Source: Perna viridis
Lineage: Eukaryota
Assembly (NCBI GenBank): GCA_037379345.1
Contig: CM074523.1
Coordinates: 32,565,678 to 32,629,677 of the forward strand
Length of the DNA: 64,000 bases
Direction of reading: 5' to 3'
Position numbers and translations under genes: made by a program. The notes beneath the pieces are model-generated. The model had not been told where the DNA came from, did not search any database, and saw only the letters and a list, made by a program, of their open reading frames with translations. The number at the start of each line of letters is the position of its first letter. Position 1 is the first letter of the stretch. Below are positions 21,501 to 51,500 of this stretch, one piece after another.

Positions 21501-24500
21501 CTGGACTTGCCACATGCTATGACTGTCCTGCTGGTTACTATTGCTTGCAAGGTGAGAAGTATTGACATTTGTATTTGTTGTAAAGTAATATAGTTACAAT
21601 AAAATCTTGTTTTAAATGAACCCTAAGAAATCTAAAAACCTGTCTATCAAGAAACGGTTTAAAGTCACTTTGTCACAATTTTAATATGTATTAATCCTTG
21701 GTAAATTGAACACCTGTCTAAACCAAACAGATTCTTAAGTCTAAAATGGGGTTTAGACAGGTTGACTGTACTTATTTTTTCATCTGCTGCTGTAAATTGT
21801 TTAAATCATTGTGACATTTTTTGTTACTTTTGATATGCACCTGTTGTTAATTCGAACTAATAATTAAAAAATTAGTGGTATAGCAGCTGTAGAATGATGT
21901 TGTAACAGATAATAGCATTGTGACATCATTACTCATGACAAATGTTGTAATAGATAATAGCATTGTGACATCATTACTCATGACAAATGTTGTAATAGAT
22001 AATAGCATTGTGACATCGTTACTCATGACAAATGTTGTAATAGATAATAGCATTGTGACATCGTTACTCATGACAAATGTTGTAATAGATAATAGCATTG
22101 TGACATCATTACTCATGACAAATGTTGTAATAGATAATAGCATTGTGACATCGTTACTCATTAACAAATGTTGTAATAGGTAATAGCATTGTGACATCGT
22201 TACTCATGACAAATGTTGTAATAGATAATAGCATTGTGACATCGTTACTCATGGCAAATGTTGTAATAGATAATAGCATTGTGACATCATTACTCATGAC
22301 AAATGTTGTAATAGATAATAGCATTGTGACATCATTACTCATGACAAATGTTGTAATAGATAATAGCATTGTGACATCGTTTCTCATGACAAATTATACA
22401 CTTATGAATTTATTGAGCACAGTGTTGTATGCAACATTATAGATCTCTTTTCATGACAAAATCTGGATTTCTTCATATTTTACAAAAATTAAAATTGTAA
22501 AATTACATTGTAGTAAAAAATAACTAAAAAAAGACAATTACTGTAATGATGCCAATTTTAACATTCTTTATTTTTCAAGTTCTACGGGAGGTAGCTGAGA
22601 GATCTTGATGAACTATATTGAAGCAATTTCCATAACCTTACAAATGAAGTGAAAATAGAACCTCCTGAAAATTTCCTACTACATGTATTTGTTATTAAAT
22701 TTACAAAGCTATAGATTATCAACACTAATATATCATCAAAGGTGTGCCTGACTGTCTAACGAACTACATCATTATTTTTAGGTGCTGAAGACTATGCAGC
22801 AACACCATGTGACCCAGGATACTATTGTCCAACTGGTACTATGTCACCAACACAGTTTCCCTGTCCTGCTGGTACATTCTATAATCTGACAATGGCTATT
22901 GATGTGATGGATTGTCTCCCTTGTCCAGGGGGAGAATACTGTGCTACAGATGGACTGGGTTCCCCAACTGGAAAATGCCAAGCTGGTAGGTTTTAGTAAA
23001 CATATGACTTAATGAGTGCTGTGAAAAATGGGATACTGTAAACCAATTTTTTTTGTGGTGTACTTATTCTTGCTGTTTTCATGGTACAGAAAAATGTGAA
23101 AAATAGTACCTGAGAAATTGATTGTTAACACTATGTAATGCAAATCATTTTTGAAATGGTGAGCATTTCCACTTGACAGAATCTTCAAAAATTTTATATG
23201 TTAATTTGTTCTAACAGGATGGTATTGTACTCTTAACTCAACCTCAGCCACACCCAGCAGTCCTGAGGGTGGAGAATGTCAGGTTGGGTTCTACTGCCCA
23301 GAAGGATCATATGCCCCCCTGCAATGTACACCAGGACAATATTGTCAGATCACAGGACTAGCCTTGCCTACTAATAACTGTACTGCTGGTAAGTATGTGA
23401 CATGGTAGAAATAGATGTTCTCAGCTTCAATGTCTAAACAGTTTTCATTTGCCACAATGAGTTTGGAGGGTTTTTTTTTTAATTAAATTAATTTAATTTA
23501 AGTGTTTACAAGTATTTTATGCTACCCAGCCTTTATATGTTTCAACAGGAAAAAGTGTAGTGTAGTTTTGGTGTTTTTTTTAAGACAAAATCATTCCATA
23601 TAGAGGCTCAGAAATGATGAAGTAGGGAACTTTACTTGCATGCAAGACACAGTGAAATGCCAATTAGTGAAAGTTCTGGTCAAATCATAAAATACAGTGA
23701 CATCTGTCAAAATCAAATTGCAGGAAAGATAATTTTATTAATGAAATAAAAAGGGCATCAAGGGGTGATAACACAAACTAATCTTTGAGGTATCATGTTA
23801 AATTCCCTTTATATTTAGTCAAGAAAGAAAAGAAGCCATCATTTGTTTTTATGAAAAATATTTTGAGCAAAATTTATAAATTCTGATATATTTTTTTTCA
23901 CATTACTCAATCTTCCAGGTTACTACTGCATACTGAAAGCTTCTGCACCCAATCCAACAGATGGAGTCACAGGCAACAATTGCCCAGTAGGGCACTATTG
24001 CCCAGAAGGAAGTGCAGACAAACAACCTTGCCCAATGGGTTATTACCTGGATGCCACACTACAAGTTGACCTTAGTGATTGTAAACTTTGCCCAGGTGGA
24101 CAATATTGCCCATCTTCAGGCTTAGAGTTACCTGTAGGCAACTGTTCATCTGGTTACTATTGCCCAGGTGGGCAGAACATGTCAATGCCTACTGAATACA
24201 AGTAAGTTAAATAGCTTAAATAGCTGTCTTCCTAAGAATCAGCTTCATTTTTAATAAGAGATTTGTTACATGATATCAGCAAAAAAATACCAAAGCACTA
24301 GCAATATGAACTAACTCCCCCTCTAAAAAAAAATCAGGAGTGACATCAGGTGCTCCGAAAGGGTAAGCATGTCTTGCTGTGTCAGGATACGTGTAGTTAC
24401 ATGAGTAGTTTGATTAATGTGTGTGAAATGGCACGTATGAGTTGATATTATAGGAAAAGTATAAAAATCATAACAGATGTTAACATGACAAGTCTTATCA

Positions 24501-27500
24501 TTGTAGCTGTCCAATTGGCCATTACTGTCCTGAAGGTTCTGATGCACCAATTAGATGTGAGAATGGAACATACCAAGATGTTGAGACACAGAATGTGTGT
24601 AAAGTCTGTCCTGCTGGGTATTTCTGTGACAACACCATGTCTATTGTTGTCCTTGACAACTCAACAACAATTTGCCCCATGGGATATTATTGTCCCGAAG
24701 GAACGAGGTATAACCAGGAACACCCATGTCCAATTGGAACATTCAACAACAGAACAGGTGAGAAAATTATTTTGTTGATTTTAAGTTTCTGAAGAAACAG
24801 TTTTTTTTAATTTGTCATTTCAAACTTTCAAAATTTTCACAAGTTGATATACTTGAACTAGTACAAAAACTTGCAATTGCCTGAACTTAACTTTTTCCTT
24901 AAATACCCTAATTATCCTTAATTGTTTTAATTTTCAGGTCTGCAAACTGTTTCTGACTGTACACCATGTTTGGGAGGATACCATTGTCCCATGGTTGGCA
25001 TGGTAACACCAGTTGACCTTTGTGACTCAGGATTCTTCTGTAAACAAAATGCCAACATCTCTACACCAAATCAAGGTAAGCTATTCCTACAAATAACATC
25101 CTACCAACAAATTTATGGGGAATATTTCATCTCTCAAGGATTTATTTTGTCAGATTTAGAAAAAGTTTTTAATTTGTCTATGACATCTTCATAAAACTTT
25201 TTTCAGTTATCTTGTTTTCTGACCATTAAAAATGCTATTTTGTGGCTGTGATGAATAAGTGATATATCACCCATTATGGTATGTTCATTTTTTCTATAAT
25301 CTATGAAAATTTGGGGTTTTTGTAACCCTGGTATTGTGTTAAAATTTGGTTCACTTTCAGGTAAAAACTTTTCAATTCTTGTTTTATTCGCTGTACCATG
25401 AACAAATAGTAATGTAAAGCAATATTTTTTGAATTTCATTACTTTCTTGTTGGTAGTGCTGATCATATGTATGACCTTTGAACTTTGACCTTCAGGTGAC
25501 GATGCCAATATATGTCCTGAGGGTCACTATTGCCCTGTTGGTACAGCAAATCCTGTTCCCTGTCCTAAGGGAACATTTGGTAACAGTACAGGACTTGAGG
25601 GTGACGTAGACTGTGTTCTGTGTCCAGCAGGAAGTTACTGTGCAGAAACTGGCATGACTAATACAAGTGGACCTTGCTCTGAAGGGTAAGATGTGGTTCT
25701 GACATAACTTATTGTGGGAGAAATGTGAATGAGGGTCATCTTTTTATTATCTAATACCTGCAAAGTATGATTTAAACAATTTTTGAAAAAAGTTTCTTTC
25801 TTTTATCTAAAATTTTCTGACAAAAAAAAATATTCAAATACTCTTGTTAGATTATATTTGGAAAGTTTCAAAATGATTATGAAGTGTTATATTGCAGAGA
25901 AATATAAGATCAAAAAACTTCTTTCAAGCAGGAGAGGGTTATCATAAATAATTTTGAAAGTTATTATCATTGATTATATGCTGGGATGTTTTCTCTTCTT
26001 TTTGCATCATTAAAGGAATGTATTTTCCTGAGTTTCTCCTTATTAAAATCAAATTCTTAAGTAATATTTTTGTTTTACAGGTGTAGATGTATTTAACAGT
26101 CATTTTTCCTAATGCTGTGTTAAATTACTACATGTATTAAAAGTTATTGTTTGTGTGCATTTTGGAATTTTTTTGTGTAATAATTAATACCTTATCCTTT
26201 TTAGGTATTACTGTGAAATAGCATCAAACCATTCCCAACGTGCCATTTGCCCAATAGGCCATTATTGCCCAGAAGGATCTGGTTCCCCAACACCATGCCC
26301 TGCTGGTACCTACACAAACACTCAAGGTCTGGCAAACATGACACAATGTACATCATGTGATCCAGGCAAATACTGCAATGATACAGGTAAGATTATTAAA
26401 GACAAGGAAAGTTAAGAAGAATATTATTTAATGTAACAGTTAAATAGGATGTGTTAAAACAAGGATTGATAAAACAAATAACATATAGTCTCTAGAAACT
26501 AAATAAAAAAAATAGTAGCTCATGAACTGAAAGCATGTATGTATGTGCACAGGAGTAATGTCTATAGTGTAGGATTGAACTGGTTACCAGGATCATCCTT
26601 TGGAAGCATGAAAAAACTTTAAATAAGTTTAAAATTGGTTAAAAGCACTATTTTAGTCAGGCAATTTAGTCCAAATTACCTGCTCCCAACTAAAGTTATT
26701 AGACAGTTAAAGCTTCTTAGAATTTATACCAAACATTGTGAAAAAGTTATCTGGTCAGTGGAGAATTATATGTCCAATCAGATGACATGTTATATCCCAA
26801 TCAGATGACATGTTATATGTCCAATCAGATGACATGTTATATCCCAATCAGATGACATGTTATATGTCCAATCAGATGACATGTTATATCCCAATCAGAT
26901 GACATGTTATATGTCCAATCAGATGACATGTTATATCCCAATCAGATGACATGTTATATCCCAATCAGATGACATGTTTTATGTCCAATCAGATGACATG
27001 TTATATCCCGTTTCTTGTCAATTGATCAATTTTCAACTATGACATACTTTTCAATTTAATAAAATGTCTTTTAATATATAAAAATTTATTTTTCAGGATT
27101 ATTTACTTACACTGGAGACTGTGATCCTGGATTCTACTGCCCAGGTGGTGACTCTGTTCCAAATCCAGTTGATACACCATGTCCAATCGGTCTACACTGT
27201 CCAATGGGAAGTGGCCTACCAGTACCATGTGATCCAGGAACTTATACCAATCTGACACAACAATCAGACTGTCTGATCTGTCCCGCTGGATTCTATTGTG
27301 TACCAGAGGAAGTTATCCAAGGTAGACTACTATTATCACTGTTAACGTTTCGTTATTCTCATCTTAATAGAAAAATAACATATATGAACTTTCATGAACA
27401 ACTGTAAGAGTAATCAAGGAAACCAAGGTTATAGCGGTAATCAACAGAATGTAATCTAGGGACAAAGACCAGACATGGAAAACAGACATACACAACAAAG

Positions 27501-30500: not shown

Positions 30501-33500
30501 TTGTTCCTTAGGGTAGCCTGCACAAAATGATTGTCGGGATTTTTTATCCATGAAAAAATATGGCCACTTTAACAAGAAATTGAATGTAGCTTAGGAAAAC
30601 AGGTGAGCGATTCAGGCTGTTCAGAGCCACTAGTTTATAAAAACCAAGTAGGGAGTCATTTCTTTCTAATTTGGTTCCAAAAAAGTATTTAGGGAGATGG
30701 TTTTTTGTTTATGTTTTTTCTTTTTATGTTACGGCCATGAAAATGACATTAATGCATCCTATAATGAGACAATGGGAACCAAGAAATTATTTTCACTTGG
30801 CCTAATGAAGTATATAATAAATCAATAGCATTACAATTTGATCTATTTATAGGACCAAGAAAACCAAGCCAGATGTAAGCCATGCTTAGCAGGTTACTAT
30901 TGTGTATCTAACAGTACAGCTGCCGATCAGATCTGTCCATCAGGACATTACTGCCCAGCGTCAACGGAATATGACATCCAGTATAAATGTCCAGTCGGAA
31001 CCTTCAATAATTTGACAGGTAAGGTCAAAGATCACTTGCAGCCATTGTAGTTAATGAAAAATCTATTTCTTTCTAAAATAAGAGGTTGAAGTCTTAAAAT
31101 GTTTAAACATTATCTTTTGTAAGGGTAAAATGTATGGAAAGTTGAAAATTTTAAATGGGGCATACAAACTATGTGCAAGAAGCTTATAGATTTTTCAAAA
31201 ACTTTCTGAATTTCCTACAACAAATGAGAAACTTCAGTGCTGTAGTAAATTTTCTGGGAACTAAGGTTACAACATTATAATGTTGGTACTAACATGGTGA
31301 TGTTTGTTCTCAATCATTTAATACATGTTATGGAATCTCTTCTCAAACTGTAACCTCATGATTTGTTTATCTACAGGTCAAGCCAATGATTCAGCTTGTG
31401 AACCTTGCACACCAGGCCATTACTGTGGATCTCCAGGACTTTTCATGCCAACTGACATGTGTGATCCTGGATGGTACTGTACTCTAGGCTCTGCCTTAGC
31501 CCAACCCACTTCACCAGAAGGAGGAAAATGTGTAGCAGGTCAATACTGCCCACATGGAAGCTCCACCCCATTAGGTTGTGACCCTGGAAAATACTGTGAC
31601 ATTGACATGATGGACAGCCCAAAAGGAGATTGTGCTGCTGGTTATTATTGTAGCAGTAACTCGTCAATCGACAAACCAACAGGAACAGGAGGTAAGATAA
31701 CTGTAAATTGATACAGGACAAAGTCCTCAAGACATTGATCTACATTTACTGGATTACTTGTCATTATGTATCAAAACATGAAGATGATGCAGGACTGCCT
31801 TTAGAATTGTGCATCTTTTATAGGGACTGAGCATTAATGGCATCCTTTATGTGTAGATGCTCTGAAAACATAAGTGCTAAAAATCACTCTGTTGGAAGTG
31901 ACGTATTTCAGAAATGACTTATGCGGTTAGAAAGTGATTATTTGAACTATAAATGCAGATGTACAGCATGTTTTATAGACTGTCTCGCATATTCAGGTTG
32001 ATTTAGACATCAGAGGTATAAAAGGTGGTCAGCAATGTCAAATGTTATTAAAGTAGCAATTGCTCTGTTTCTCATGGGCAAAGCTTAAAATCCATTTATA
32101 AAACAGTAATGAATTGTTACTATATTCTGTGAATTCAAGTTTTGAGGTCTCTCTTTTACTACAATATGATCCAAAGTTGTTGAAGTATTTATTTTATGCA
32201 GGTCTTGTGGTTGACCAAAATTTTACAGGTAGTTTTTGAACTACTTCCTTCTATAACGTGCCAGATAATATACAAGTGGTGTATTATAGGTGACCGCTGC
32301 CCACCGGGATATTATTGTGAAGCTGGCTATTCTACCCCTAGCCCATGTCCTCCAGGATACTTCCAGCCAAGCTACAGAGCTGAGAATGTGACATGGTGTA
32401 TACTGTGTACTGGAGGAAAATACTGCAATGCTTCTGGTCTGTCTACTGAGGATGGAGATTGTGATGCAGGTAGGAAAGATTACTTAGAAGTAGGATAAAT
32501 GAACGGAAAATGCCTTTATCTCAAAAGAAAAAAACAATTATTTTCTGTAAAAATGATTAACTCTTGCAAGTTTATTTTACCACATTGACATGAAAGGTCA
32601 AATGTCATATCTACAATGTTCACGTGTTTCAGAATTATCTAATCTGTTTTGTCCCATTATAGGTTACTACTGCCCAGAAGGACAAATTGTGAGAAACCCC
32701 TCAGCCTACCTCTGTTCGGCTGGCTACTTCTGCCAAACTGGCTCCCCCTCTGAGACGTTATGTCCATCAGGCAGCTACCAAGATGAGGCAGGACAATCCA
32801 CATGTAAGAACTGCCCTGAAGGATTCTATTGTGATAGCTCTGTAGGACCAATTGTTAATTACACACTTTACAGCTGTCCTGAGGGCCACTACTGTCCTAA
32901 TGGTACTAAGGTGGCGACTGAGTTCCCATGTCCTGCTGGTACTTTTACCAACCAAACTGGTCTTGGATCTGACAGTGAATGCTCTGACTGTCTAGGTAAG
33001 TCATCTTCATTTATTGTACCCCTACTCTTTATGTGCTATTACTTTATTTTACCCCTACTCCTTATGTGCTATTACTTTATTGTACCCCTACTCTTTATGT
33101 GCTATTACTTTATTGTACCCCTACTCTTTATGTGCTATTACTTTATTGTACCCCTACTCTTTATGTGCTATTACTTTATTGTAATGTGCTATTACTTTAT
33201 TTTACCCCTACTCTTTATGTGCTATTGCTTTATTGTAATGTGCTATTACTTTATTGTACCCCTACTCTTTATGTGATATTACTTTATTTTTCTTAAATGC
33301 TGCTTACTTCCACCCAAACGTGTCATTCAATTTGTAAGGAGAAAATATATTTTTTCTGTTACAGTGGAAAGGGATCATTTCTGTTCAATTTTTAGGAAGG
33401 AATTTTGTATCTTATTTTCTACCTGAAGGTCTCCATGTTGGATATTATCTGGTCAGATTCATTTTGTAATATTGGGTGGAGTCTAACTTCTATGTTAGTT

Positions 33501-36500
33501 TGCATGTGGTCATTTCATTTATAAATTAGTGTGTTTTATACAGGTAGCTTTTATATTTTAAAAGTAACTCTTTGATTTGAATCTCTGATAAGAACAGGAT
33601 GTACTCTTCTACCATTAAACTAAAAAAACACAGTATATAAATACAGAAACTATTCAAATCTTGAATTATTGCAAATCAATCATTTTAAAAAAGCTAATTT
33701 TGAGTCACACCTTAAAAGGATTTGATAATAGGAAACTAAACCACTGTACAGAAACATTTTGATAAGTAACAATTTTTCTTGTTTTAGGAGGGTACTACTG
33801 TACCAGTGGCACCACAAATCCAAATCTCCCCTGCAGCGAGGGATATTACTGTAGGTCTGGGGCAATGACAGCTGCACCCACCCAGGGCATCAATGCTGAC
33901 GAGTGCCCTGTAGGTCATTATTGTCCTCAGCAGACAACAGAGCCGATTGCCTGTCCAAGAGGAACATTCTCAAACAACGTGAGACTTAGGAATGAGACAG
34001 ACTGTACTCCTTGTACTAAAGGTATGCATATTTAATACTCTAAACAAATTGATATTGGTGGTGTATTAATTTTCGCAATTTTCACTCTAGACAGAAAAAA
34101 TGTACCCAGGAAATTGACTTTTAACACTAAAAAGGCTTTTCATTTTTTTAAAATTGCAAAATTTGGTATCTGTGAATATGTTGGTGAGGGGACATGGAAA
34201 TGCCAGTTGTCTGTTAGTCTGCAAATTCCACACTTTTTAATTTGTCATGGTTTTACGAAATAAGTTTTTTTTTTGGTATGTTGCCTTATTATGAAGAGTT
34301 ACAGATTAAGTTTGACTTTGGTTACGGTTGATTGATTTTTATGGAAGTTATGGCCCTTGGACTTAGAAAATTGCCGTGAATTTACAGTTTTCTGCTCTTT
34401 TTATTTAATGCTTTTACCAATTGATTTCATATTTTGTATGTAGTCTTACTATGAGAAGTTACAGGTTAAGTTCGACTATAGTTATGGTTGAATGATTTTT
34501 ACGGAAGTTACAGCCCTTGGACTTAGAAAATGTCATTGAATTTAAAGTTTTCTGCACTTTTTTTTACATGGGGGACATTGGAACGCTATTCTTTTATTTT
34601 TTTAAATTTCTAACAGGCTCCTACTGTAATGACACTGCTCTGACTGCACCAACTGGCCTGTGTACTGCTGGATACTTCTGTGTTGTCGGATCAGACAACC
34701 CAACCCCTGAAATCTGTACTGCTGGTAGATACTGTCCTGAGGGATCTCACACACCAACAAGATGCCCAGCGGGAACTTTCTCCAACACAACAGGACTAAC
34801 TGCAACATATGAGTGTACAAACTGTACAAAGGGATCATATTGTATGTCAACAGGATTGACAGATGTTGAAGGAAACTGTACACAGGGTTATTACTGTCCT
34901 GAAGGTAAATTTTAAGGAGCTTGTGGTCCTTGACTCATTGACTCATACTTTTGGTATTGTAATTGTTTTTTGCAGCATATAATGCATGATTTTGCCCTTT
35001 TTGAAGTATTCTTTTTAAAAACCATAAAACTATAGATATTTATAAGTTTTATAAGGCCTTAACCACTCCCCTTGACAGACACTTGTGCATGTTGTAACTA
35101 ACTTATGGATAAGACCTTCTTAAAAATCCTGATGAAAAAAATCTTACAAAAGGGTTTTTATCTTATTTTTTTCTTTTTTTTCAGGTTCTGACCAACACAA
35201 TGAGATAATCTGCCCCATAGGACTCCATTGTCCAGAAGGCAGTGATGAGCCAAGATCTTGTTCTTCTGGATATTTTACAAATAAAACTGGGGAATGGCAG
35301 TGTGATATCTGTCCCAATGGGTTAGTATATATTTCACATATAAAACGAGAATGGTGGTATGACATTTGTCTGGATGGGTTAATACATGTATATATTTCAC
35401 AGGACTGGGGAATAGCAGTGTGACATCTGTCTGGATGGGTTAGTACATGTATATACTTCAGTCAGGATGGGTTAGTACATGTATATACTTCACAGGACTG
35501 GGGAATGGCAGTGTGACGTCTGTCTGGATGGGTTAGTACATGTATATACTTCACAGGACTGGGGAATGGCAGTGTGACGTCTGTCTGGATGGGTTAGTAC
35601 ATGTATATACTTCACAGGACTGGGGAATGGCAGTGTGACGTCTGTCTGGATGGGTTACTACATGTATATACTTCACAGGACTGGGGAATGGCAGTGTGAC
35701 GTCTGTCTGGATGGGTTAACACATGTATATATTTCACAGGACTGGGGAATAGCAGTGTGACATCTGTCTGGATGGGTTAGTACATGTATATACTTCAGTC
35801 AGGATGGGTTACTACATGTATATACTTCACAGGACTGGGGAATGGCAGTGTGACATCTGTCTGGATGGGTTAGTACATGTATATACTTCAGTCAGGATGG
35901 GTTACTACATGTATATACTTCACAGGACTGGGGAATAGCAGTGTGACGTCTGTCTGGATGGGTTAGTACATGTATATACTTCACAGGACTGGGGAATGGC
36001 AGTGTGACGTCTGTCTGGATGGGTTAATACATGTATATACTTCACAGGACTGGGGAATGGCAGTGTGACATCTGTCTGGATGGGTTAGTACATGTATATA
36101 CTTCAGTCAGGATGGGTTACTACATGTATATACTTCACAGGACTGGGGAATAGCAGTGTGACGTCTGTCTGGATGGGTTAGTACATGTATATACTTCACA
36201 GGACTGGGGAATGGCAGTGTGACGTCTGTCTGGATGGGTTAATACATGTATATACTTCACAGGACTGGGGAATAGCAGTGTGACATCTGTCTGGATGGGT
36301 TAGTACATGTATATACTTCACAGGACTGGGGAATGGCAGTGTGACGTCTGTCTGGATGGGTTACTACATGTATATACTTCACAGGACTGGGGAATGGCAG
36401 TATGACAATAATGTATTTACTATTCTTTAATGCTGAAGTTCTACAATGTCATTGACTTCTATGTTTTACAATGACATTGACATTACATGTTCCATTAGAA

Positions 36501-39500
36501 CATAGTGCATACAGTATCTATAAAAATTTAATTATGAGAGACTTTATGCAAGGCAAGATATTAAAAAACTATTTTTATCTTTCCCCAAGTATCAAAAGGG
36601 GAATGATTATAGTGAAATTCAACAAATGGCATATAGCCATTATACAAAATACATTTAGAGATCTTCAGATAGAAAACCTCTTTACTTAGATATAATATTT
36701 ACCAATTGAAAATGGAGGAAAATCTGGTTTTTTTTATTGTTTCCAAAAACTGGTTTCTGAACTTCATTCTTTTTCCAAACAATCCATATGACTGTATATG
36801 CCATACTATTTTAGGGGAATTTTTACCTCAGTTCTTCTGTCTCATTTCAGTTTCTACTGTCTGCCAGAGAATGTAACAGCTGGTGTCCCTACATCTGGGT
36901 ATTTCGACTGTCCAGCAGGATATTACTGTCCACAAGGAACTGGATTGGACTGGCAGCCATGTCCTAAAGGAACCTACAGCACCAAGACCAACATATACAT
37001 GGTAAGTTTATTTTGCTTAGCAGCTCCAGAAAATGTTGAAAATTAAATTTGTGAAATTTCATATTCATTCTTAGCAATATGATAGTAGTTTAGTACATTG
37101 TAAACTTATTGAATTTTCATGTTTGCTTATTTAAATTGTTTGTCAAATGACATATGTTCTTGGGTATTAATTTTAATTTTGGAGATTATGAAATATTTGA
37201 TAGAATGAAATTGGACTTTTGCTAGAACTGTTTTCTTCATTATTTGTCTACCACAAATATTAGCAAAAAATAAGTACACTAGAAATAATTTCACCCGTTC
37301 AGTTTTCTTTTCCAGTAAATGGGTACTGTACACATATTGTTTGCAGTATAGGGTGCAAAAGTAACACAATAAGATATGCCACCCAAGACATAGTTGAGGG
37401 TGATATACTGTCTGAGTGTGTTACTCTGTGTATCACCCTCTGCTGCAGGCAGGGTGATATACTGTCCGAGTGTGTTACTCTGTGTATCACCCTCTGTATT
37501 ACATTGTACTGATTACATTTTGTACATCACACTTTTATGTACACTATTGTAACCTTTTAGAAACTTAAGTATAATTGTTATAAAACCTCAGATATAGTGA
37601 ATGTCAAACTGGAATGAAATTTTTAAGTATTTTAACATTTAAATAAATCAACAATAGCTAAATAACAAAAAGGAACACTTCCACTATTCATTTTTCTAAT
37701 TAAAGTCATCTTATATTAAAATTAAAAGGATGCACATATGGAAAAGTAAAAACATTTCTGGTCGAGAGGGAGATTTATTGGAGTGACATATCGTAACTAC
37801 CAAGTTTTTAGGGAACTAGAATTGAATAGACCAAATTAACACCTGATGATTATCCAACAGAAACTTGTGATTTTTTTGTATGAAGTATAATATATGGTTA
37901 TTTTATTTACACTGGGATAAATGAGTATTGATTTTCTTTGATTTTCACAATTAACCTTTTAAAAATTAGTGCATATAATTCCCTATATTAATGATTATTT
38001 GTAGCAATTTGTGTTGTCCAATTTTAAAAGTTTGTGATTTCAAAACTTATAGCCGTTTGAAATTTCTTCCTATTTTTTCATGGAGATAATTATCTTTTCT
38101 CTAGCTTACTCATTGCACTGATTGTGATGGAGGGAGGTTCTGCTCAGAAGAGGGAGCCACCAGTACTACCGGAGATTGTGCTGCTGGATATTATTGTCAA
38201 TCAGGTGTTGACAGACCAAATCCAGATAACTCTGCCACAAACAGCTCATATCCTCCAACCTGTCCTCTTATTGGTGGTCACACAGGTAACAAATTACCTC
38301 CCTTTTAAGTTCCATACCTTAATGCTTTGTCACATTGTAAGTGCTGTCACAACTACATTTCTCATAAAATTTATACCAAAGCTTGCTATCACTAAGACTG
38401 GACAATTTTTAAAAAAATGCCACCTGGATAATTTTTGTGGCAATTATGCCACTTTGATTATCGAAAACCTGGCACATGCAGGAGGCATGGAACTTAAATT
38501 ATTTATTTTGCTCCAGAACAGAGTTATTTCCCTCGACAATGTTGAAATCTATTAAAAAATCATATTATAAAATATGACAATATAGCATACAGCTTTACAA
38601 GAAGCTCTGAAATTACATCATCTGATGATTTCTTCTTTTCTGCAATTCACAAAAAGTTGTAATGAAGCTTGGCAAATGGACCAAAGTACATGTACTAATA
38701 TGCTACAAATCTCCTAGTATCCAAAAATTCAGATGGTGTTGTACAAAACCTTTAGTAAAGAGGCACCATGTTTTTCAAAAGATTTTTAATCATTTGGAAA
38801 AAAAGTTAAAAATGTCCTGTTTCTGTTACAGAAGAAGTTCTTAAATATGTTAATAGTGAAGGCATCATATGTAATGCCAGTTTCCCATTTATGTTGCAGG
38901 ATATGGAGATGTCTGTCCTCCAGGCTACATGTGTCCAACTGGCAGTGAACTTCCTGTAGAGTGTGGTGCTGGAACATACCAAGATGAACCTGGAGCAAGC
39001 GATTGTAAGACCTGCCCAGCAGGGTTCTACTGTACAACCAACTCCACCGATTTCTCCGACAAGCCTTGCCCGGCTGGATACTACTGTCCTAATGGCACCA
39101 CCCATGCCCATCAATATCCATGTCAGAAAGGATCATACAATCCAGCCATTCAACAGACGAACAGCTCATCGTGTGTTCTTTGTGATGGAGGCAAATATTG
39201 CCCAGTAGATGGAGCTGATTCACCAGCAGGCAACTGCAGGTAGGCAACATTTTAGATATTTTCATCAATGAAATATTAATCTCTGTAAACGCTTATTATT
39301 TTATGCTGATAAGCAATAAGCAAAAAAGTTCCTGAAAATTGGAGAATTACTCCAAGAACCCAAAATAAAGTCTCTGCTAAAATTACATGATTTACTGAAT
39401 AATATCTCCACTCATTAAAGTTGGCCTATATTGCCATTGTTTTGTCCATCTGTCCATTACACTTTTCTATAACAGATTTCTCAGCTTCTATTGGTGTATA

Positions 39501-42500: not shown

Positions 42501-45500
42501 TTTTGATGATGAATATCCTTGTCCTAAGGGAACTTTTAACAACAGAACGGGTAATGTTTACATTGAACTTCTTGCCTTTAATGTGTATTTGGAAATTTGT
42601 TTTAGCTTTTTATATTTTCTGTGGTGAAGTCTTTGCAGAAACACACAAAAAAACTTTTTATTTTTATTTTCATGAAATATGGCCAAAAATAGACATACCT
42701 GTTAACCCTCCCATATTTCAGTGGAGATTCCCACAAAATCAGTGAAAAATTTCGGACATCCCACAGAAATGTTAAGATTTATGGGAGGGTTTTGGTTTAT
42801 ATTTTCAGTGACGAATACTTAATAATTGAATTCTTACATTTAAAAAAAATTGCTTTTCATCAAAATCTCCCACATAAAACAGTGTCAATGGGGGAGAATC
42901 TTCCACACGAATTGTTCCAAGGTTAACAGATATTATACAGACTGTTCCAAAGTTAACAGGTATGATTCTGACTGTTCCAAGGTTAACAGGTATAATACAC
43001 ACTGTTTTTTAAGGTTAACAGGTATGATTCAGACTGTTCCAAAGTTAACAGGTATGATTCAGACTGTTCCAAGGTTAACAGGTATGATTCAGACTGTCAG
43101 AAAGTAGAATAAACAGATAATTTTAGTCTTGAGAAAATATACAGCAGTTAATAAGATCACTATATGTATTTATGCATACAAGACCAGTTGATTCTCATGT
43201 TCTTAATTTAGATCTTATAAAAAGGTTATTTTGCATTGTCACTTTAACTCTTAATGCATATTGAATAAAATATTATGGATGTTTGCTGGTCATGTTCAGC
43301 CATTTTTTGTCAGCTTTTCAGACTCTGCTGGTTTTATCCATTTTGTATAGCATTTATATTTTTTACACAGTGATCCCCACTTTTCTTTTCATAATTTCAT
43401 TAAACACACCTTAAAATTAAAATGTTTTATTTTGAGAAGTTTAAATGAAATCCTTGTTTTTTTCTTCATTGTTTTTAATAGATAAAACCTACTAAGATAA
43501 AACCTTATACAAGAGAAATCCTTTTCCCAGCAAAATTTCAAATGCGTATATCTTAAAAATGAGCTCACTGACTATTTTTTCTTCTTATATTGTTCTAGCG
43601 TGAAAAATAATTTTGCAACCCATTAAAATCCTTGATATTCTTAGACCAGCGAACATTCTTTAAATAGGCTTAAACATATGTTTAAGTAATGCTTTGTTAA
43701 GATTTTAATCTATCTTTTGTTTCATTTTAGGACTGAACAGTACACATGAATGCTCTGAATGTGTTGGTGGAATGGCATGTGACATGGATGGTTTGACCTA
43801 TCCCATGAGGCCTTGCTCAGCTGGATATTTCTGTAGACAGAGTGCCGACTCCACAACACCTAGTTTAGGTAAGATTGACAGTATGTTTGCATTGTAATGT
43901 GCTGTGTTTTTTTATAAATCTTATATTTGTGTGTAGTAGGTTGTTTCTACTAAGTGTTCTACTGAGGTGAATGTTATTTCAATGACTTAGCACTTGTTTT
44001 CTCATATTAACTTTGATATCACTATTGTGAGAGCCAAAAAATGATAGCATTGATGTATGGTATTGTATTGGGTAGTTACTTGTTTTAAATTGTAAGTTTT
44101 CAAAATTTTCAAAAATGGTCATTTGGAATATTGAAAGAGTAATCAAGGGAACCAAGGTTATAGCGGTAATCAAAAGAATGTAATCCAGGGAAAAAAGGAG
44201 ATTGTTTAAATTACAGGGAAATCTAACTCCATGAGGTCTCTGAATAAATAAAAAAAAAATCATTCAGTTATTTGCATAATCAGTTTCCTTATCCACAAAG
44301 GAAATTATTTTTATGTAGTCCAAAAGGTACTCCAAAAGTGATGAAATTTAAAAATCTCTTCTATTTTAGTATTTGATACTTGAGCTATTTTGTAGACTTG
44401 TGTCAAACAAATCCTATGGCATGGCTTCCTCAGGATGCATTAACGAAAATTGGATTATTGTAGGTTCCTTGGCCGACCGATGTTCAGCAGGATCATACTG
44501 TCCAGAGCAGACGGCTGAACCAATCGGCTGTCCTGAGGGTAGTTATAGTCCTGCCGTGGGGCTCCAGATGGAAAGTCAGTGTATCAATTGTACAGGAGGA
44601 TATTATTGTAATGAAACAGGTTTGTAGGCTTAAATCTGTCTTTGTTTAAGTAAACATTGGACTCTGGTAACACCCTCATTCATTTACTTTAAAAAGTACT
44701 CTAGCTGACAGCTTCCAAAACCAAAGCGTCATACTTTATATTGGTTCTTTAATGAGCTTAGCTCACAGTTTTTCTAGTTAAATTACCTAATTCAGGATTT
44801 ACCTTTATTGTTATTATTGTCACATGTCGTAGTATTTATTTAGGTTTAACTTCAGGACTTACCTTTAATGTTATAATGGTCACATGGTGTCTTATTTATT
44901 TATGTTTAACTTCAGGACTTACCTTTATTGTTATGGTGTCTTATTTATTTAGGTTTAACAGCAGTTGTAGGACAGTGTCTCCCATCGTATTACTGTCCTG
45001 TTGGCTCCAAGGTATCCACTGAGATAATTTGTACGGCTGGTCACTACTGTCCACTGGGTACAGAGACACCTGTCCCATGTCCTGCTGGAACGTTCTCGGA
45101 CATCCAGGGACTCAGTATGGAGTCAGAATGTGCTAACTGTACTAAAGGATATTATTGTGAGACTTCTGGCTTGACAAATGTTACTGGTCCTTGCAAGGAA
45201 GGTAATCATTAAAGATAGGTTGTTCTAATGTAGCACTCGATGTTTAGAGCTTCTACAGATTTTACACAACTGAAATCCTTTATATTTTTTATATACTTTC
45301 CATTAAGAAATCCTGGAATGTTTAAATTGAAATTGTGGGTCTTATATACCGTGCTCCAAGGAAATTCTGCAAAATGGTGAAAAAGATCAGACCAAGATTC
45401 AATTGGACCAAGCAGCTGTCAAGAATTTTCTGAAACATTTCAGGTTTCATTTCATACTAATAAGATATGACATTTTGAAAATAGGAAGCAACTGTAATCA

Positions 45501-48500: not shown

Positions 48501-51500
48501 AGCTTTATACAAATTAGCACAGTACACAGTAAATAGCTTTGGTGATTTGTAATGAGTGTGTAGCTGAGTGTTATATAGTAAATCGAGAAGTAGATATATA
48601 TAGGTCTACAGAAGACATACTCCACAATAGAAGCAGATATACAGCAGATATATATAGGTCTATAGAAGATATACTCCACAATAGAAGCAGATATACAGCA
48701 GATATATATAGGTCTGCAGAAGACATACTCCACAATAGAAGCAGATATACAGCGGATATATATAGGTCTACAGAAGACATACTCCACAATAGAAGCAGAT
48801 ACATATAGGTTTGCAGAAGACATACTCCACAATAGAAGCAGATATATATAGGTCTACAGAAGACATACTCCACAATAGAAGCAGATATACAGCATATATA
48901 TATATAGGTCTGCAGAAGACATACTCCACAATAGAAGCAGATATACAGCAGATATATATAGGTCTGCAGAAGACATACTCCACAATAGAAGCAGATATAC
49001 AGCGGATATATATAGGTCTGCAGAAGACATACTCCACAATAGAAGCAGATATACAGCAGATATATATAGGTCTGCAGAAGACATACTCCACATATTTTCG
49101 GGAGTTATTTATTTTTGTTGTTTTTTTTTTTTAATAAATTACAAAAAAAATCACAGCAAGTAAGTCCCTTTATTATGCAACACACATCCTTTATTATACA
49201 ATTTAGATTTTAGATGATATGTAACTCATGAAGATAAATAGCAACAATATTGAATGCATATTATTTTATTTATTATTATTAATTTTAGTGTTAGACCTGT
49301 ATAGCATGAAACTGATTAAATTGAATTTTAATTTTAGATTTTAGTATCATTTGATTGAAAATCCCAATTTAAATTGTGACAGTAAAGTGGTTGTTTGATA
49401 GATTGATTGATTATGTCTTAATGTCCTATGGCAAATTTTTTATGAATTTCATTCAAGAATGATTGACAAATCAAACAGACTTTGTTTTGACACACTGAGC
49501 TGGGTTAGCTCACATCTTATGGGTTTGGAAAGGGTCCCTCATTAATGATTGATCTGCTAATCTTGATACAGATGTTTGAACATTTGTGGGTTTTTTATTT
49601 ATAACTGCCTTAGCTTTGTTTAAACAACTCTACTTGTCCTTTCTATGATTTTTCATTTCCTTCTTTTTCAGGATATTATTGTGATAACAGTATAGAACCC
49701 ATTGGGGACCTCACTAACTACACATGCCCACTTGGGTATTACTGTCCTAATGGAACTGAGACAGCCACACAGTATCCCTGTCCTGCTGGTACCTTCAACA
49801 ACAGATCTGGCATGGTGTATGAGACAGACTGTCAGCCATGTACACCTGGGTATTACTGTCAGAACACTGGACTTCCAGAACCTCAGGGGCTTTGTTTCCC
49901 AGGGTAAGTTGACAGTGGCATAGTGTATGGAAGGGTCTGTCAGGCATGTCCTTTTAGGTATTACTGTTAGAATAATTGATTTCCAAATCCAAACTGTTTT
50001 CTAGTGTGAACATGGTTTTTGAGATAAGGAATGTTGAAAAGTAAGCAATCTCCCAATCAAGAGTCCAGAAATTTTGACAGCCCATGCTGGACATTTTATC
50101 AAACTTCAACTGACGTTTTTGTCAGTCTTTTAAGATGCTCAGATCGAAAATAAACTTTGTATGTAGTTATTTTAAGATAAATATGGGAAAGTGTGTTATT
50201 TCATCACATACTCTGTCTTTTACAAAATATCAGAGGAAGTGAATGAGTTTGGTTTCGACCACATGTGGACGTTCCAACATTTAAACAAAACATATCTCTT
50301 GGACTTTTTCATCACATAGGCAAACAGCCAATACTTCCGAGTGATGAAAAATATGTTGATTATTTATAAAAGAAAATCGCAAACACATTTTGTTTGTTGA
50401 CTTCTGTGTTAAAACGATTCAATCAACGAATTAATAATTACAAACTACATGTACGACTGATTTGAAGTTTCAGTTCCATGTGCTTTCGTTACCTCTGAAA
50501 GATCGGTGGGGAAATGGTGGACTTGTCAGTCTTTTTTCTTAATTAATAAATGTATAAAGATTCTCCGAGTTACTACAATTAATTCGTATAGGCAATGGGG
50601 CTGCACTTGTACCGTTAATTCAATTATATAATCAACTTATCAGTCACAGGTGGCTGCACATTGGCTGAAATTGACACAAACCTGTCAATTAATTTCCAAT
50701 AAACAATTAGGAGACTGGTAGACAGGATGTTTATACACTAATAAAACCACGCAGACTGTAATTTATAAGGGTTGACAATTTTTTTTAAGTCCGATATTGG
50801 AAAATTGTTGTAGGTCATTTGCAAAATTTGTCGGTCAATGACCGGCATTTTTTACCGTTTCCGGATCCATGCTCCTGATCCCAGACCTAATAAGTTTGAC
50901 ATACCTCAATATACTAGTATAATGCTTTTTTTTTCTAAGAACATACTATCGCCTAAAGGGTTGTGATTCTAAGGTTAGTGTACATGTACAGTGAAACCTG
51001 GGTAAATGGACCCTGGATCTTATTTCAAAAGATTTGCCAATGCTGGATTTCAAGCAAGTAGTCATTTATATATAACTGATTTTTTATTTGTTTTCAGCTA
51101 CTACTGCAATGGAAGTACTATTGACCCCAACCCAACAGAAGGACTTTGCCCAGTAGGCAACTATTGTCCAGAAGGCAGTTACCAGCCTACTGCTTGCCCA
51201 GATGGAACAATTGCTGTGTCAACAGGCAATGACAACCTTACTGATTGTGAGCTTTGTAAACCTGGCAACTATTGTACTCCTGCTAGCTCAAAGAATGGTA
51301 AGTTCACTATTTGAAAAGTAGTGTTTTCAAATTATTATGCAATTTTTTAATATCTTGTAGCTAATCTAGTCATTATTATTTACTGTGGAGATATTTGTTC
51401 TATTTTAAAAAAAATTATGTATTAAGATTAATTTTATTATACTTGTATCATAATATATTGGCTGAAAATTGGTGGTTTTAATTTTTTTACATAAGTGCTA

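What the first reader, a model, noticed from the sequence alone, without database searches (positions are those of the whole stretch)
35286..36407. Exon-end-derived minisatellite forms an array of 14 potential in-frame 36-nt micro-exons
Seen: the 61-bp unit copies the last ~35 nt of exon w40 (ACTGGGGAATGGCAGTGTGATATCTGTCCCAATGG) plus its donor GTTAGT, and the unit junction creates an acceptor (TACTTCACAG). Each unit reads ttcacAG|G ACT GGG GAA TGG CAG TGT GAC GTC TGT CTG GAT GG|GTta: 36 nt, phase 2-2 like the host intron, encoding TGEWQCD(V/I)CLDG with one more CxxC. Nine units are open (starts 35496, 35557, 35618, 35679, 35833, 35987, 36048, 36202, 36324), four of them with the native GTTAGT donor. 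Five carry an in-frame TAG (35403, 35740, 35926, 36141, 36263) and would be poison exons. Adjacent units are only 25 nt apart, too close to be spliced together. The first degenerate copy also offers an in-frame alternative donor at 35378 (+19 aa). Inference: a nascent VNTR-encoded cassette/poison-exon switch, or exon birth by tandem amplification.
Basis: partly seen in the sequence, partly recalled or inferred. Interest (0 to 1): 0.8.

Follow-up and report, generated by a model that had tools for sequence, protein, structure and literature searches.

The report
Exon-end minisatellite, spliced out whole
The end of one exon, together with its splice signal, has been copied about 20 times head to tail into the following intron of a giant invertebrate gene, but the main transcripts use only the original splice site and remove every copy, so this is a further example of a known, apparently harmless kind of repeat.

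Summary
Intron 35321-36850 of a giant Ephrin_rec_like-repeat gene opens with a 1.1-kb minisatellite. It has 14 full 61-bp units, 4 truncated 32-bp units, a decayed first copy and a cut last copy. All derive from the end of exon 35185-35320 plus its GTTAGT donor. Nine units are open 36-nt phase-2/2 segments and five carry TAG.

The splicing reading is not supported. Spliced transcript contigs (18-27 kb) from three independent studies join 35320 directly to 36851, and no contig enters or leaves a unit. The few RNA-run pieces inside the array are short, shallow and colinear with the genome.

- Unit donors equal the native donor, which is itself weak (6th percentile in this gene).
- Unit acceptors are mediocre (29th percentile).
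- 36 nt is far below this gene's predicted exons, and the 25-82-nt gaps are far below its predicted introns.

A 99.7% identical copy 393 kb away carries one extra 215-bp block, so the array is length-unstable.

It fits the 'mirage' exon-boundary minisatellites of amphioxus and the human F7 intron-7 VNTR. This scan has already reported the same class elsewhere in this genome. Rare micro-exon or poison-exon use remains unexcluded.

The parts
35185..35320 (+). It encodes part of an Ephrin_rec_like-type Cys-rich repeat and ends in phase 2 with the donor TGG|GTTAGT.
   Evidence: GT..AG joints 34904>35185 and 35320>36851 in 18-27 kb transcript contigs of runs X2, X3 and X6. Translation. Weak PF07699 match. 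Donor scores 4.7 bits leave-one-out, 6th percentile of 70 predicted donors.
35268..35326 (+). Source segment ('unit zero'): roughly the last 53 nt of the exon plus the first 6 nt of the intron (GTTAGT).
   Evidence: Full-length alignment of the first copy (35327-35383) to this segment.
35321..36850 (+). Host intron of 1530 nt, phase 2, removed in one piece in the dominant transcript.
   Evidence: Single joint 35319>36850 (cut +1), GT..AG, in X2, X3 and X6. No other joint touches the array.
35327..35383 (+). First, decayed copy (57 nt). It carries the in-frame alternative donor GTTAAT at 35378.
   Evidence: Array rows. Alignment and open +19-codon read. Donor scores 2.0 bits, below every predicted native donor.
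35378..36359 (+). Homogenised array of 14 full 61-bp units and 4 truncated 32-bp units in 215-bp higher-order blocks. It holds the 14 candidate 36-nt segments, nine open and five with TAG, plus 10 pseudo-donors identical to the native 9-mer.
   Evidence: TRF, unit census, row layout, splice-site scores.
36360..36407 (+). Terminal partial unit (48 of 61 nt). It keeps the TATGAC variant that only the first decayed copy shares, so the two edge units escaped homogenisation.
36851..37001 (+).
   Evidence: Joints 35320>36851 and 37001>38105. Translation. Acceptor scores 7.1 bits.

Best explanation
This is an exon-boundary ('mirage'-type) minisatellite and a neutral by-product of tandem duplication.

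Inferred origin: a segment of about 57-61 bp, covering the last ~53 nt of exon 35185-35320 and its donor GTTAGT, was duplicated in tandem. Unequal exchange then expanded it in 61-bp and later 215-bp blocks. The spliceosome uses the first donor, the only one that sits at the end of a full-size exon with a strong acceptor. Everything downstream therefore became intron and escaped selection. The copies kept the exon's frame only because they are young and homogenised. The TAG variant has spread to 5-6 units without hindrance.

Shown: the structure, its exon origin, its length difference between two copies, and the removal of the whole array in the dominant mRNA.

Inferred: why the units are ignored. 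The likely reasons are first-donor preference, as in F7, exon definition failing on a 36-nt segment, a mediocre acceptor, and gaps too short to splice. Neutrality is also inferred.
For: - Structure and exon origin.
- Splicing: three independent studies give 18.6-27 kb spliced contigs with 35320>36851 as the only joint at this intron.
- Reads in the array: RNA-run pieces are 60-104 nt, at depth 2-22 against 35-50 on exons. They run straight through the 25-nt spacers and the truncated units, so they are unspliced. No contigs lie on 36505-36691, in the non-repeated tail of the same intron. This fits the roughly 30 genomic copies of the unit words lifting faint pre-mRNA signal above the assembler's threshold.
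- Donors: unit GTTAGT donors equal the weak native 9-mer. GTTACT, GTTAAC and GTTAAT score below all 70 predicted native donors.
- Acceptors: units score 7.1 bits, the 29th percentile of native acceptors. 124 silent intronic AGs in the window (5.5%) score as well or better.
- Sizes: predicted introns are at least 170 nt (median 512), and predicted exons have a 10th percentile of 131 and a median of 190 nt.
- Frame: using a pseudo-donor beyond 35421 alone runs into a stop.
- Instability: the copy at +393,087 bp has the same unit order plus one extra 215-bp block.
- Edge units are the most diverged, as described for mirage clusters (PMC3087553).
- Same class in the same gene: a 43-bp exon-end plus GTGAGT array at 52378-52544.
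- Published precedents in which the copies stay silent: amphioxus Adh3, globin, TnC and PGBD5 (PMC3087553, PMC3902484) and human F7 IVS7 (PMC1557585).
Against: - Assembled contigs show the main isoform only. An isoform below roughly 5-10% would be lost, as would one destroyed by NMD. No raw reads or NMD-blocked data could be laid.
- By the gene's own PWMs, four open units have a donor identical to the native one and an acceptor equal in score to the authentic w41 acceptor. Occasional use is therefore plausible.
- The exon and intron size limits come from my own crude gene model, which imposed minimum exon and intron sizes of 45 nt. Only 6 exons and 5 introns in it are confirmed by RNA.
- Neutrality is inferred, not measured.
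Confidence: 0.8

Rival explanations
1. Low-level or conditional cassette or poison micro-exon use. One unit at a time is spliced in. An open unit adds 12 residues with an extra CxxC. A TAG unit makes an NMD target. Array length would then tune productive output.
For: Units are in phase with the host intron and nine are open. Four open units carry the native donor 9-mer, and their acceptor score equals that of the authentic w41 acceptor. Contigs cannot exclude rare isoforms. Ebner et al. proposed this route from mirage unit to real exon (PMC3087553).
Against: No joint into or out of any unit appears in three studies. The 36-nt size is far below this gene's predicted exons. The first unit lies only 82 nt from the donor, against a minimum predicted intron of 170 nt. 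TAG units spread freely. In F7 and in the amphioxus genes the copies are silent (PMC1557585, PMC3087553, PMC3902484).
Confidence: 0.12
2. Functional intronic element. [quoted passage not shown]
For: The native donor is weak, at the 6th percentile. Each unit carries GGGG and GGG runs and a U1-like site. GC skew peaks over 34-36 kb.
Against: Nothing tested here points to function. Copy number differs between two 99.7% identical copies. Such arrays arise at many boundaries, in this gene and, according to unchecked scan notes, across this genome. That fits a mutational by-product better.
Confidence: 0.05
3. Assembly artefact. The array, or its length, results from mis-assembly of a shorter repeat.
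For: Long arrays of near-identical units are hard to assemble. The locus lies in a ~393-kb region that appears twice at 99-100% identity, which may itself be an uncollapsed haplotype.
Against: Two assembled copies show the same unit order. Short contigs from other studies match variant units, truncated units and their junctions exactly. In run X1, which looks like DNA, depth on array words is several-fold above the flanking intron.
Confidence: 0.03

Closest known systems
'Mirage' minisatellites of amphioxus (Adh3, globin BflGb6/BflGb9, troponin C, PGBD5)
   Same: A tandem array whose unit spans an exon-intron boundary, with the authentic boundary as its outermost unit. Many units keep AG/GT signals, yet regular splicing is undisturbed. 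Length differs between haplotypes or copies. Homogenisation occurs inside the array and the edge units are excluded (PMC3087553, PMC3902484).
   Different: A different phylum: other notes of this scan call the genome a bivalve, which I did not verify. Here each full unit holds both an acceptor and a donor around an in-frame 36-nt segment. The acceptor arose secondarily inside exon-derived sequence. The array is organised in 215-bp higher-order blocks.
Human F7 intron 7 37-bp VNTR
   Same: The first element spans the exon-intron boundary. The authentic donor is followed by several identical pseudo-donors that stay silent, and the most upstream site is chosen (PMC1557585).
   Different: F7 units offer donors only and the array has fewer copies. 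The F7 mechanism was shown by mutagenesis, whereas here only the outcome is observed.
Intron or exon gain by internal tandem duplication (Rogers model; variable internal tandem repeats at exon-intron boundaries in human segmental duplications)
   Same: A duplication that includes splice signals creates spare sites that could define new introns or exons (PMC3087553 discussion; PMC2812944).
   Different: Those cases are supported by transcripts that use the new sites. Here no such transcript was seen.

Membership tests
Exon-boundary ('mirage') minisatellite | Tandem repeat whose unit contains an exon end (or start) plus the adjoining splice signal | tested here: met
   The unit aligns to exon 35268-35320 plus GTTAGT.
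Exon-boundary ('mirage') minisatellite | The authentic exon-intron boundary is the outermost unit of the array | tested here: met
   The array starts inside exon 35185-35320 and runs into the intron. RNA uses the first donor.
Exon-boundary ('mirage') minisatellite | Regular splicing is not disturbed by the copies | tested here: met
   35320>36851 is the only joint in contigs of three studies. Rare isoforms are not excluded.
Exon-boundary ('mirage') minisatellite | Length instability between alleles or copies | tested here: met
   14 against 17 full units in two 99.7% identical copies. Whether these are alleles or paralogues is unresolved.
Exon-boundary ('mirage') minisatellite | Concerted evolution inside the array, edge units excluded | tested here: met
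   Inner units differ at about 6 sites. The first and last copies are diverged and share TATGAC.
Cassette or poison exon | Transcripts with junctions from the flanking exons into and out of the segment | tested here: not met
   No such joint in X2, X3 or X6. Contigs only, so rare forms could be missed.
Cassette or poison exon | Splice sites comparable to those used in the gene | tested here: inconclusive
   The GTTAGT donor equals the weak native one (6th-9th percentile). The acceptor is at the 29th percentile. 5.5% of silent AGs score as well.
Cassette or poison exon | Exon and flanking intron sizes that the organism's spliceosome handles | tested here: inconclusive
   36 nt against a predicted exon 10th percentile of 131 nt. 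Gaps of 25-82 nt against a predicted intron minimum of 170 nt. The model had a 45-nt floor and is mostly unconfirmed.
Cassette or poison exon | Conservation of the segment or its frame in related species | not testable with these tools
   No eukaryotic genome collection of relatives is available here.

The most novel reading that the evidence does not exclude
A minority of transcripts, below what assembled contigs can show or removed by NMD, splice in single units. The open-to-TAG unit ratio and the unit number, which differ between copies, would then set a small tunable loss of productive mRNA, or add a 12-residue CxxC insert. That would be a VNTR-encoded micro-exon and poison-exon system caught at birth.
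Probability: 0.1. Interest if true: 0.6.

Novelty: new member of a known kind. Interest (0 to 1): 0.25.

Why it matters
As it stands this is one more exon-boundary minisatellite. It adds to evidence that the class is not confined to amphioxus and a few human genes.

Its specific value is as a natural experiment in splice-site choice. It offers 10 exact copies of a weak authentic donor and 14 acceptors that score like the next real acceptor, all in frame, and the main transcript ignores every one. This supports first-donor and exon-definition rules outside vertebrates. It also provides a ready substrate for minigene tests like those done on F7.

If rare inclusion were shown, it would be a direct view of exon birth from a minisatellite.

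Tried and rejected
- My first self-trained exon chain over-predicted tiny exons, including 15-nt pieces in every unit. I discarded it. The stricter run still placed two 78-nt 'exons' in the array and moved the w41 acceptor to 36815. The RNA joints contradict both, so I removed them before PWM training.
- I considered that CLDG in place of CPNG marks decay of a conserved motif. I rejected this because Pro follows the second Cys in only 28 of 58 CxxC..G motifs of this gene, and Leu occurs natively in 4.
- Recursive splicing is rejected. Joining 35320 to a unit start does not rebuild a GT donor (sequence).
- A clean single tandem duplication cannot explain the 3' end of the array, where the last unit is cut at 48 of 61 nt. 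I left this unresolved.
- Non-GT..AG 'joints' 34646>36909 and 36964>38171, and the loose ends at 36909, are cross-mapping between the gene's internal protein repeats.
- The arrays at 33010-33288 and 44791-44950 proved to be purely intronic, not boundary-spanning.
- The search of earlier findings returned nothing by place (near) or for micro-exon and poison-exon words. One call failed on a word format.
Exons were searched separately by reference.
- The large protein searches were not used, because gene identity beyond the Pfam family does not bear on the claim.

Full report
**What is there**

The window (G000 contig 13, 32,565,678-32,629,677, + strand) is about 35% G+C. Its + strand is filled by one very large, intron-rich gene built from Cys-rich repeats of the Ephrin_rec_like (PF07699) type. 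My crude exon chain gives about 75 exons in the window.

Exon 35185-35320 ends in phase 2 with TGG|GTTAGT. The next exon starts at 36851. Both borders are confirmed by RNA.

**Check of the observation**

- TRF reports a 61-bp array over 35325-36406, with higher-order periods of 154, 215 and 308 bp.
- Cutting the sequence at every donor-like GTTA gives this layout:
  - the exon tail;
  - a decayed 57-nt copy;
  - 14 full 61-nt units;
  - 4 truncated 32-nt units, at 35439, 35776, 35869 and 36084;
  - a final 48-nt partial unit, 36360-36407.
- All 14 full units read acceptor CACAG | 36 nt | GTTA.., in the phase of the host intron. Four open units have GTTAGT.
- The extension to the donor at 35378 is open for 19 codons.

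**Origin**

The first decayed copy (35327-35383) aligns along its whole 57 nt with exon 35268-35326. The ancestral unit was therefore roughly the last 53 nt of the exon plus only GTTAGT of the intron.

The pyrimidine-rich stretch and the CAG|G of the later units descend from the exon codons for G-Y-F-T-N-K-T. They reached their present form through a 4-nt deletion and substitutions. The acceptor is a secondary accident, not a product of the junction itself.

The two edge copies share a TATGAC variant that the homogenised inner units lack. This is the edge effect described for mirage clusters (PMC3087553).

**Instability and a second copy**

The unit occurs at only two places in the 723-Mb assembly: here and 393,087 bp downstream on the same contig.

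- The partner region is 99.6-99.7% identical over at least window 15405-45068.
- Sampling shows that the duplicated block reaches from at least 32.40 to 32.70 Mb, but not to 32.30 or 32.80 Mb.
- It is therefore either a tandem duplication of about 393 kb or an uncollapsed haplotype. I could not tell which.
- Its array has the same unit order plus one extra 215-bp block, giving 17 full and 5 truncated units.

Whichever it is, the array changes length by whole higher-order blocks.

**Is it spliced?**

Runs holding 22-32% of the sampled words of 33700-39300 come from eight studies. Exons make up about a quarter of that stretch. I laid four of the runs.

- X2, X3 and X6 come from three studies. 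Each gives one contig of 18.6-27 kb with only GT..AG joints: 34021>34617, 34904>35185, 35320>36851, 37001>38105 and 38285>38900. They are spliced transcripts, and the gene is expressed.
- No joint begins or ends at any unit or at 35378.
- Inside the array there are only 60-104-nt pieces at low depth (about 2-22, against 35-50 on exons). They are colinear with the genome across spacers and truncated units, for example 35689-35792 and 35763-35831, so they are unspliced.
- No contigs lie on 36505-36691, in the non-repeated tail of the same intron. I attribute the difference to the roughly 30 genomic copies of the unit words lifting faint pre-mRNA signal above the assembler's threshold. This is inference.
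- X1 lacks the exons and looks like low-coverage DNA. Its depth on array words is several-fold above the flanking intron.

Contigs drop rare variants, so this shows what the main isoform is. It does not show that minor ones are absent.

**Could the units be spliced?**

I trained donor and acceptor weight matrices on 71 predicted exons of this gene. The model reproduces the RNA-confirmed borders, except for the w41 acceptor, which I corrected from the RNA.

| Site | Score | Rank among predicted native sites |
|---|---|---|
| Native w40 donor | 4.7 bits (leave-one-out) | 6th percentile |
| Unit GTTAGT donors (same 9-mer as native) | 5.4 bits | 9th percentile |
| Unit GTTACT, GTTAAC, GTTAAT donors, including 35378 | 1.5-2.0 bits | below every native donor |
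| Unit acceptors | 7.1-7.9 bits | 29th-36th percentile, equal to the w41 acceptor |

- 124 silent intronic AGs in the window (5.5%) score as well as the unit acceptors.
- Predicted introns are at least 170 nt (median 512). The gaps here are 25 nt between units and 82 nt from the donor to the first unit.
- Predicted exons have a 10th percentile of 131 and a median of 190 nt, against 36 nt here.
- Reading on from the exon without an acceptor meets a stop at 35421.

**Explanation**

This is a neutral exon-boundary minisatellite. Tandem duplications that lie wholly inside an exon break the frame and are lost. One that includes the donor is harmless, because the first donor is used and all later copies become intron. 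Arrays that touch exons will therefore tend to look like this one (inference).

Why the first donor wins is not shown here. In human F7 intron 7, mutagenesis showed that identical downstream pseudo-donors are functional but never compete with the most upstream site (PMC1557585). The 36-nt size and mediocre acceptor should further prevent exon definition. This rests on established knowledge about short internal exons and is cited from memory.

The open frames are inherited from the exon and kept by homogenisation. The nonsense variant has itself been amplified to 5 units, or 6 in the second copy, which argues against selection on the frame.

**Comparison with what is known**

All five features that the amphioxus papers describe for 'mirages' are met; see the membership table (PMC3087553, PMC3902484).

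Human internal tandem repeats at exon-intron boundaries sometimes do create new introns with transcript support (PMC2812944). No such support exists here.

Notes from other agents of this scan report the same class in several other genes of this genome: s1-753423, s1-751513, s1-751505 and s1-757973. They gave me the term 'mirage' and the F7 lead. I checked both in the papers, but I did not check their genome-wide claims or their identification of the genome as a bivalve.

In my own window, boundary-spanning copies in the adjacent intron occur at two donors, 35320 and 52405. A weaker, purely intronic repeat lies before the acceptor at 44953.

**Verdict**

The origin and VNTR parts of the interpretation are supported. 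The cassette or poison-exon function is unsupported but not excluded at low level. This is a new member of a known kind, of modest interest. Its main use is as a natural test case for splice-site choice.

Noticed in passing
G000:C13:32.40-32.79 Mb against 32.79-33.19 Mb (the window lies in the first copy); loci L001, L011, L012, L014-L024: A block of roughly 393 kb, which includes this giant gene, appears twice in tandem at 99-100% identity with a constant offset of 393,087 bp. It is either a very recent segmental duplication or an uncollapsed haplotype placed in tandem by the assembler.
   Followed up: partly
window 52378-52544: A second donor-type boundary array in the same gene. The last ~28 nt of exon 52280-52405 plus GTGAGTAAAAT is repeated about 4 times (43-bp unit). 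Copy 2 has a destroyed donor (GATGAG), and copies 3 and 4 keep GTGAGT.
   Followed up: partly
window 44791-44950: A 60-bp unit is repeated about 2.5 times immediately upstream of the acceptor of exon 44953. Each unit ends in an acceptor-like TTTAAC(TTC)AG. The repeat is intronic only and contains no exon sequence.
   Followed up: partly
window 33010-33288: A 33-bp intronic minisatellite (about 8 copies with indel variants) starts 12-14 nt after the donor of the exon ending near 32995-32999. It is not derived from the exon.
   Followed up: partly
window 21897-22394; 48586-49092; 54425-54699; 26766-27009; 59746-59988: Further intronic minisatellites in the same gene: 45 bp x 11, 54 bp x 9.6, 31 bp x 9, 47 bp x 5 and 42 bp x 5.8. 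There are about 15 arrays in 64 kb, an unusually minisatellite-rich gene.
   Followed up: no
window 1-64000, + strand: The host gene is enormous. Transcript contigs reach 18.6-27 kb, and about 75 predicted exons in this window alone are nearly all Ephrin_rec_like-type Cys-rich repeats. The repeat region seems to end near 58.9 kb, where the exon sequences change character.
   Followed up: partly
window 34200-34570: All four runs show very high depth (up to 470) and rearranged joints or loose ends in the intron at 34261-34634. This suggests a dispersed, transcribed repeat such as a transposon fragment.
   Followed up: no
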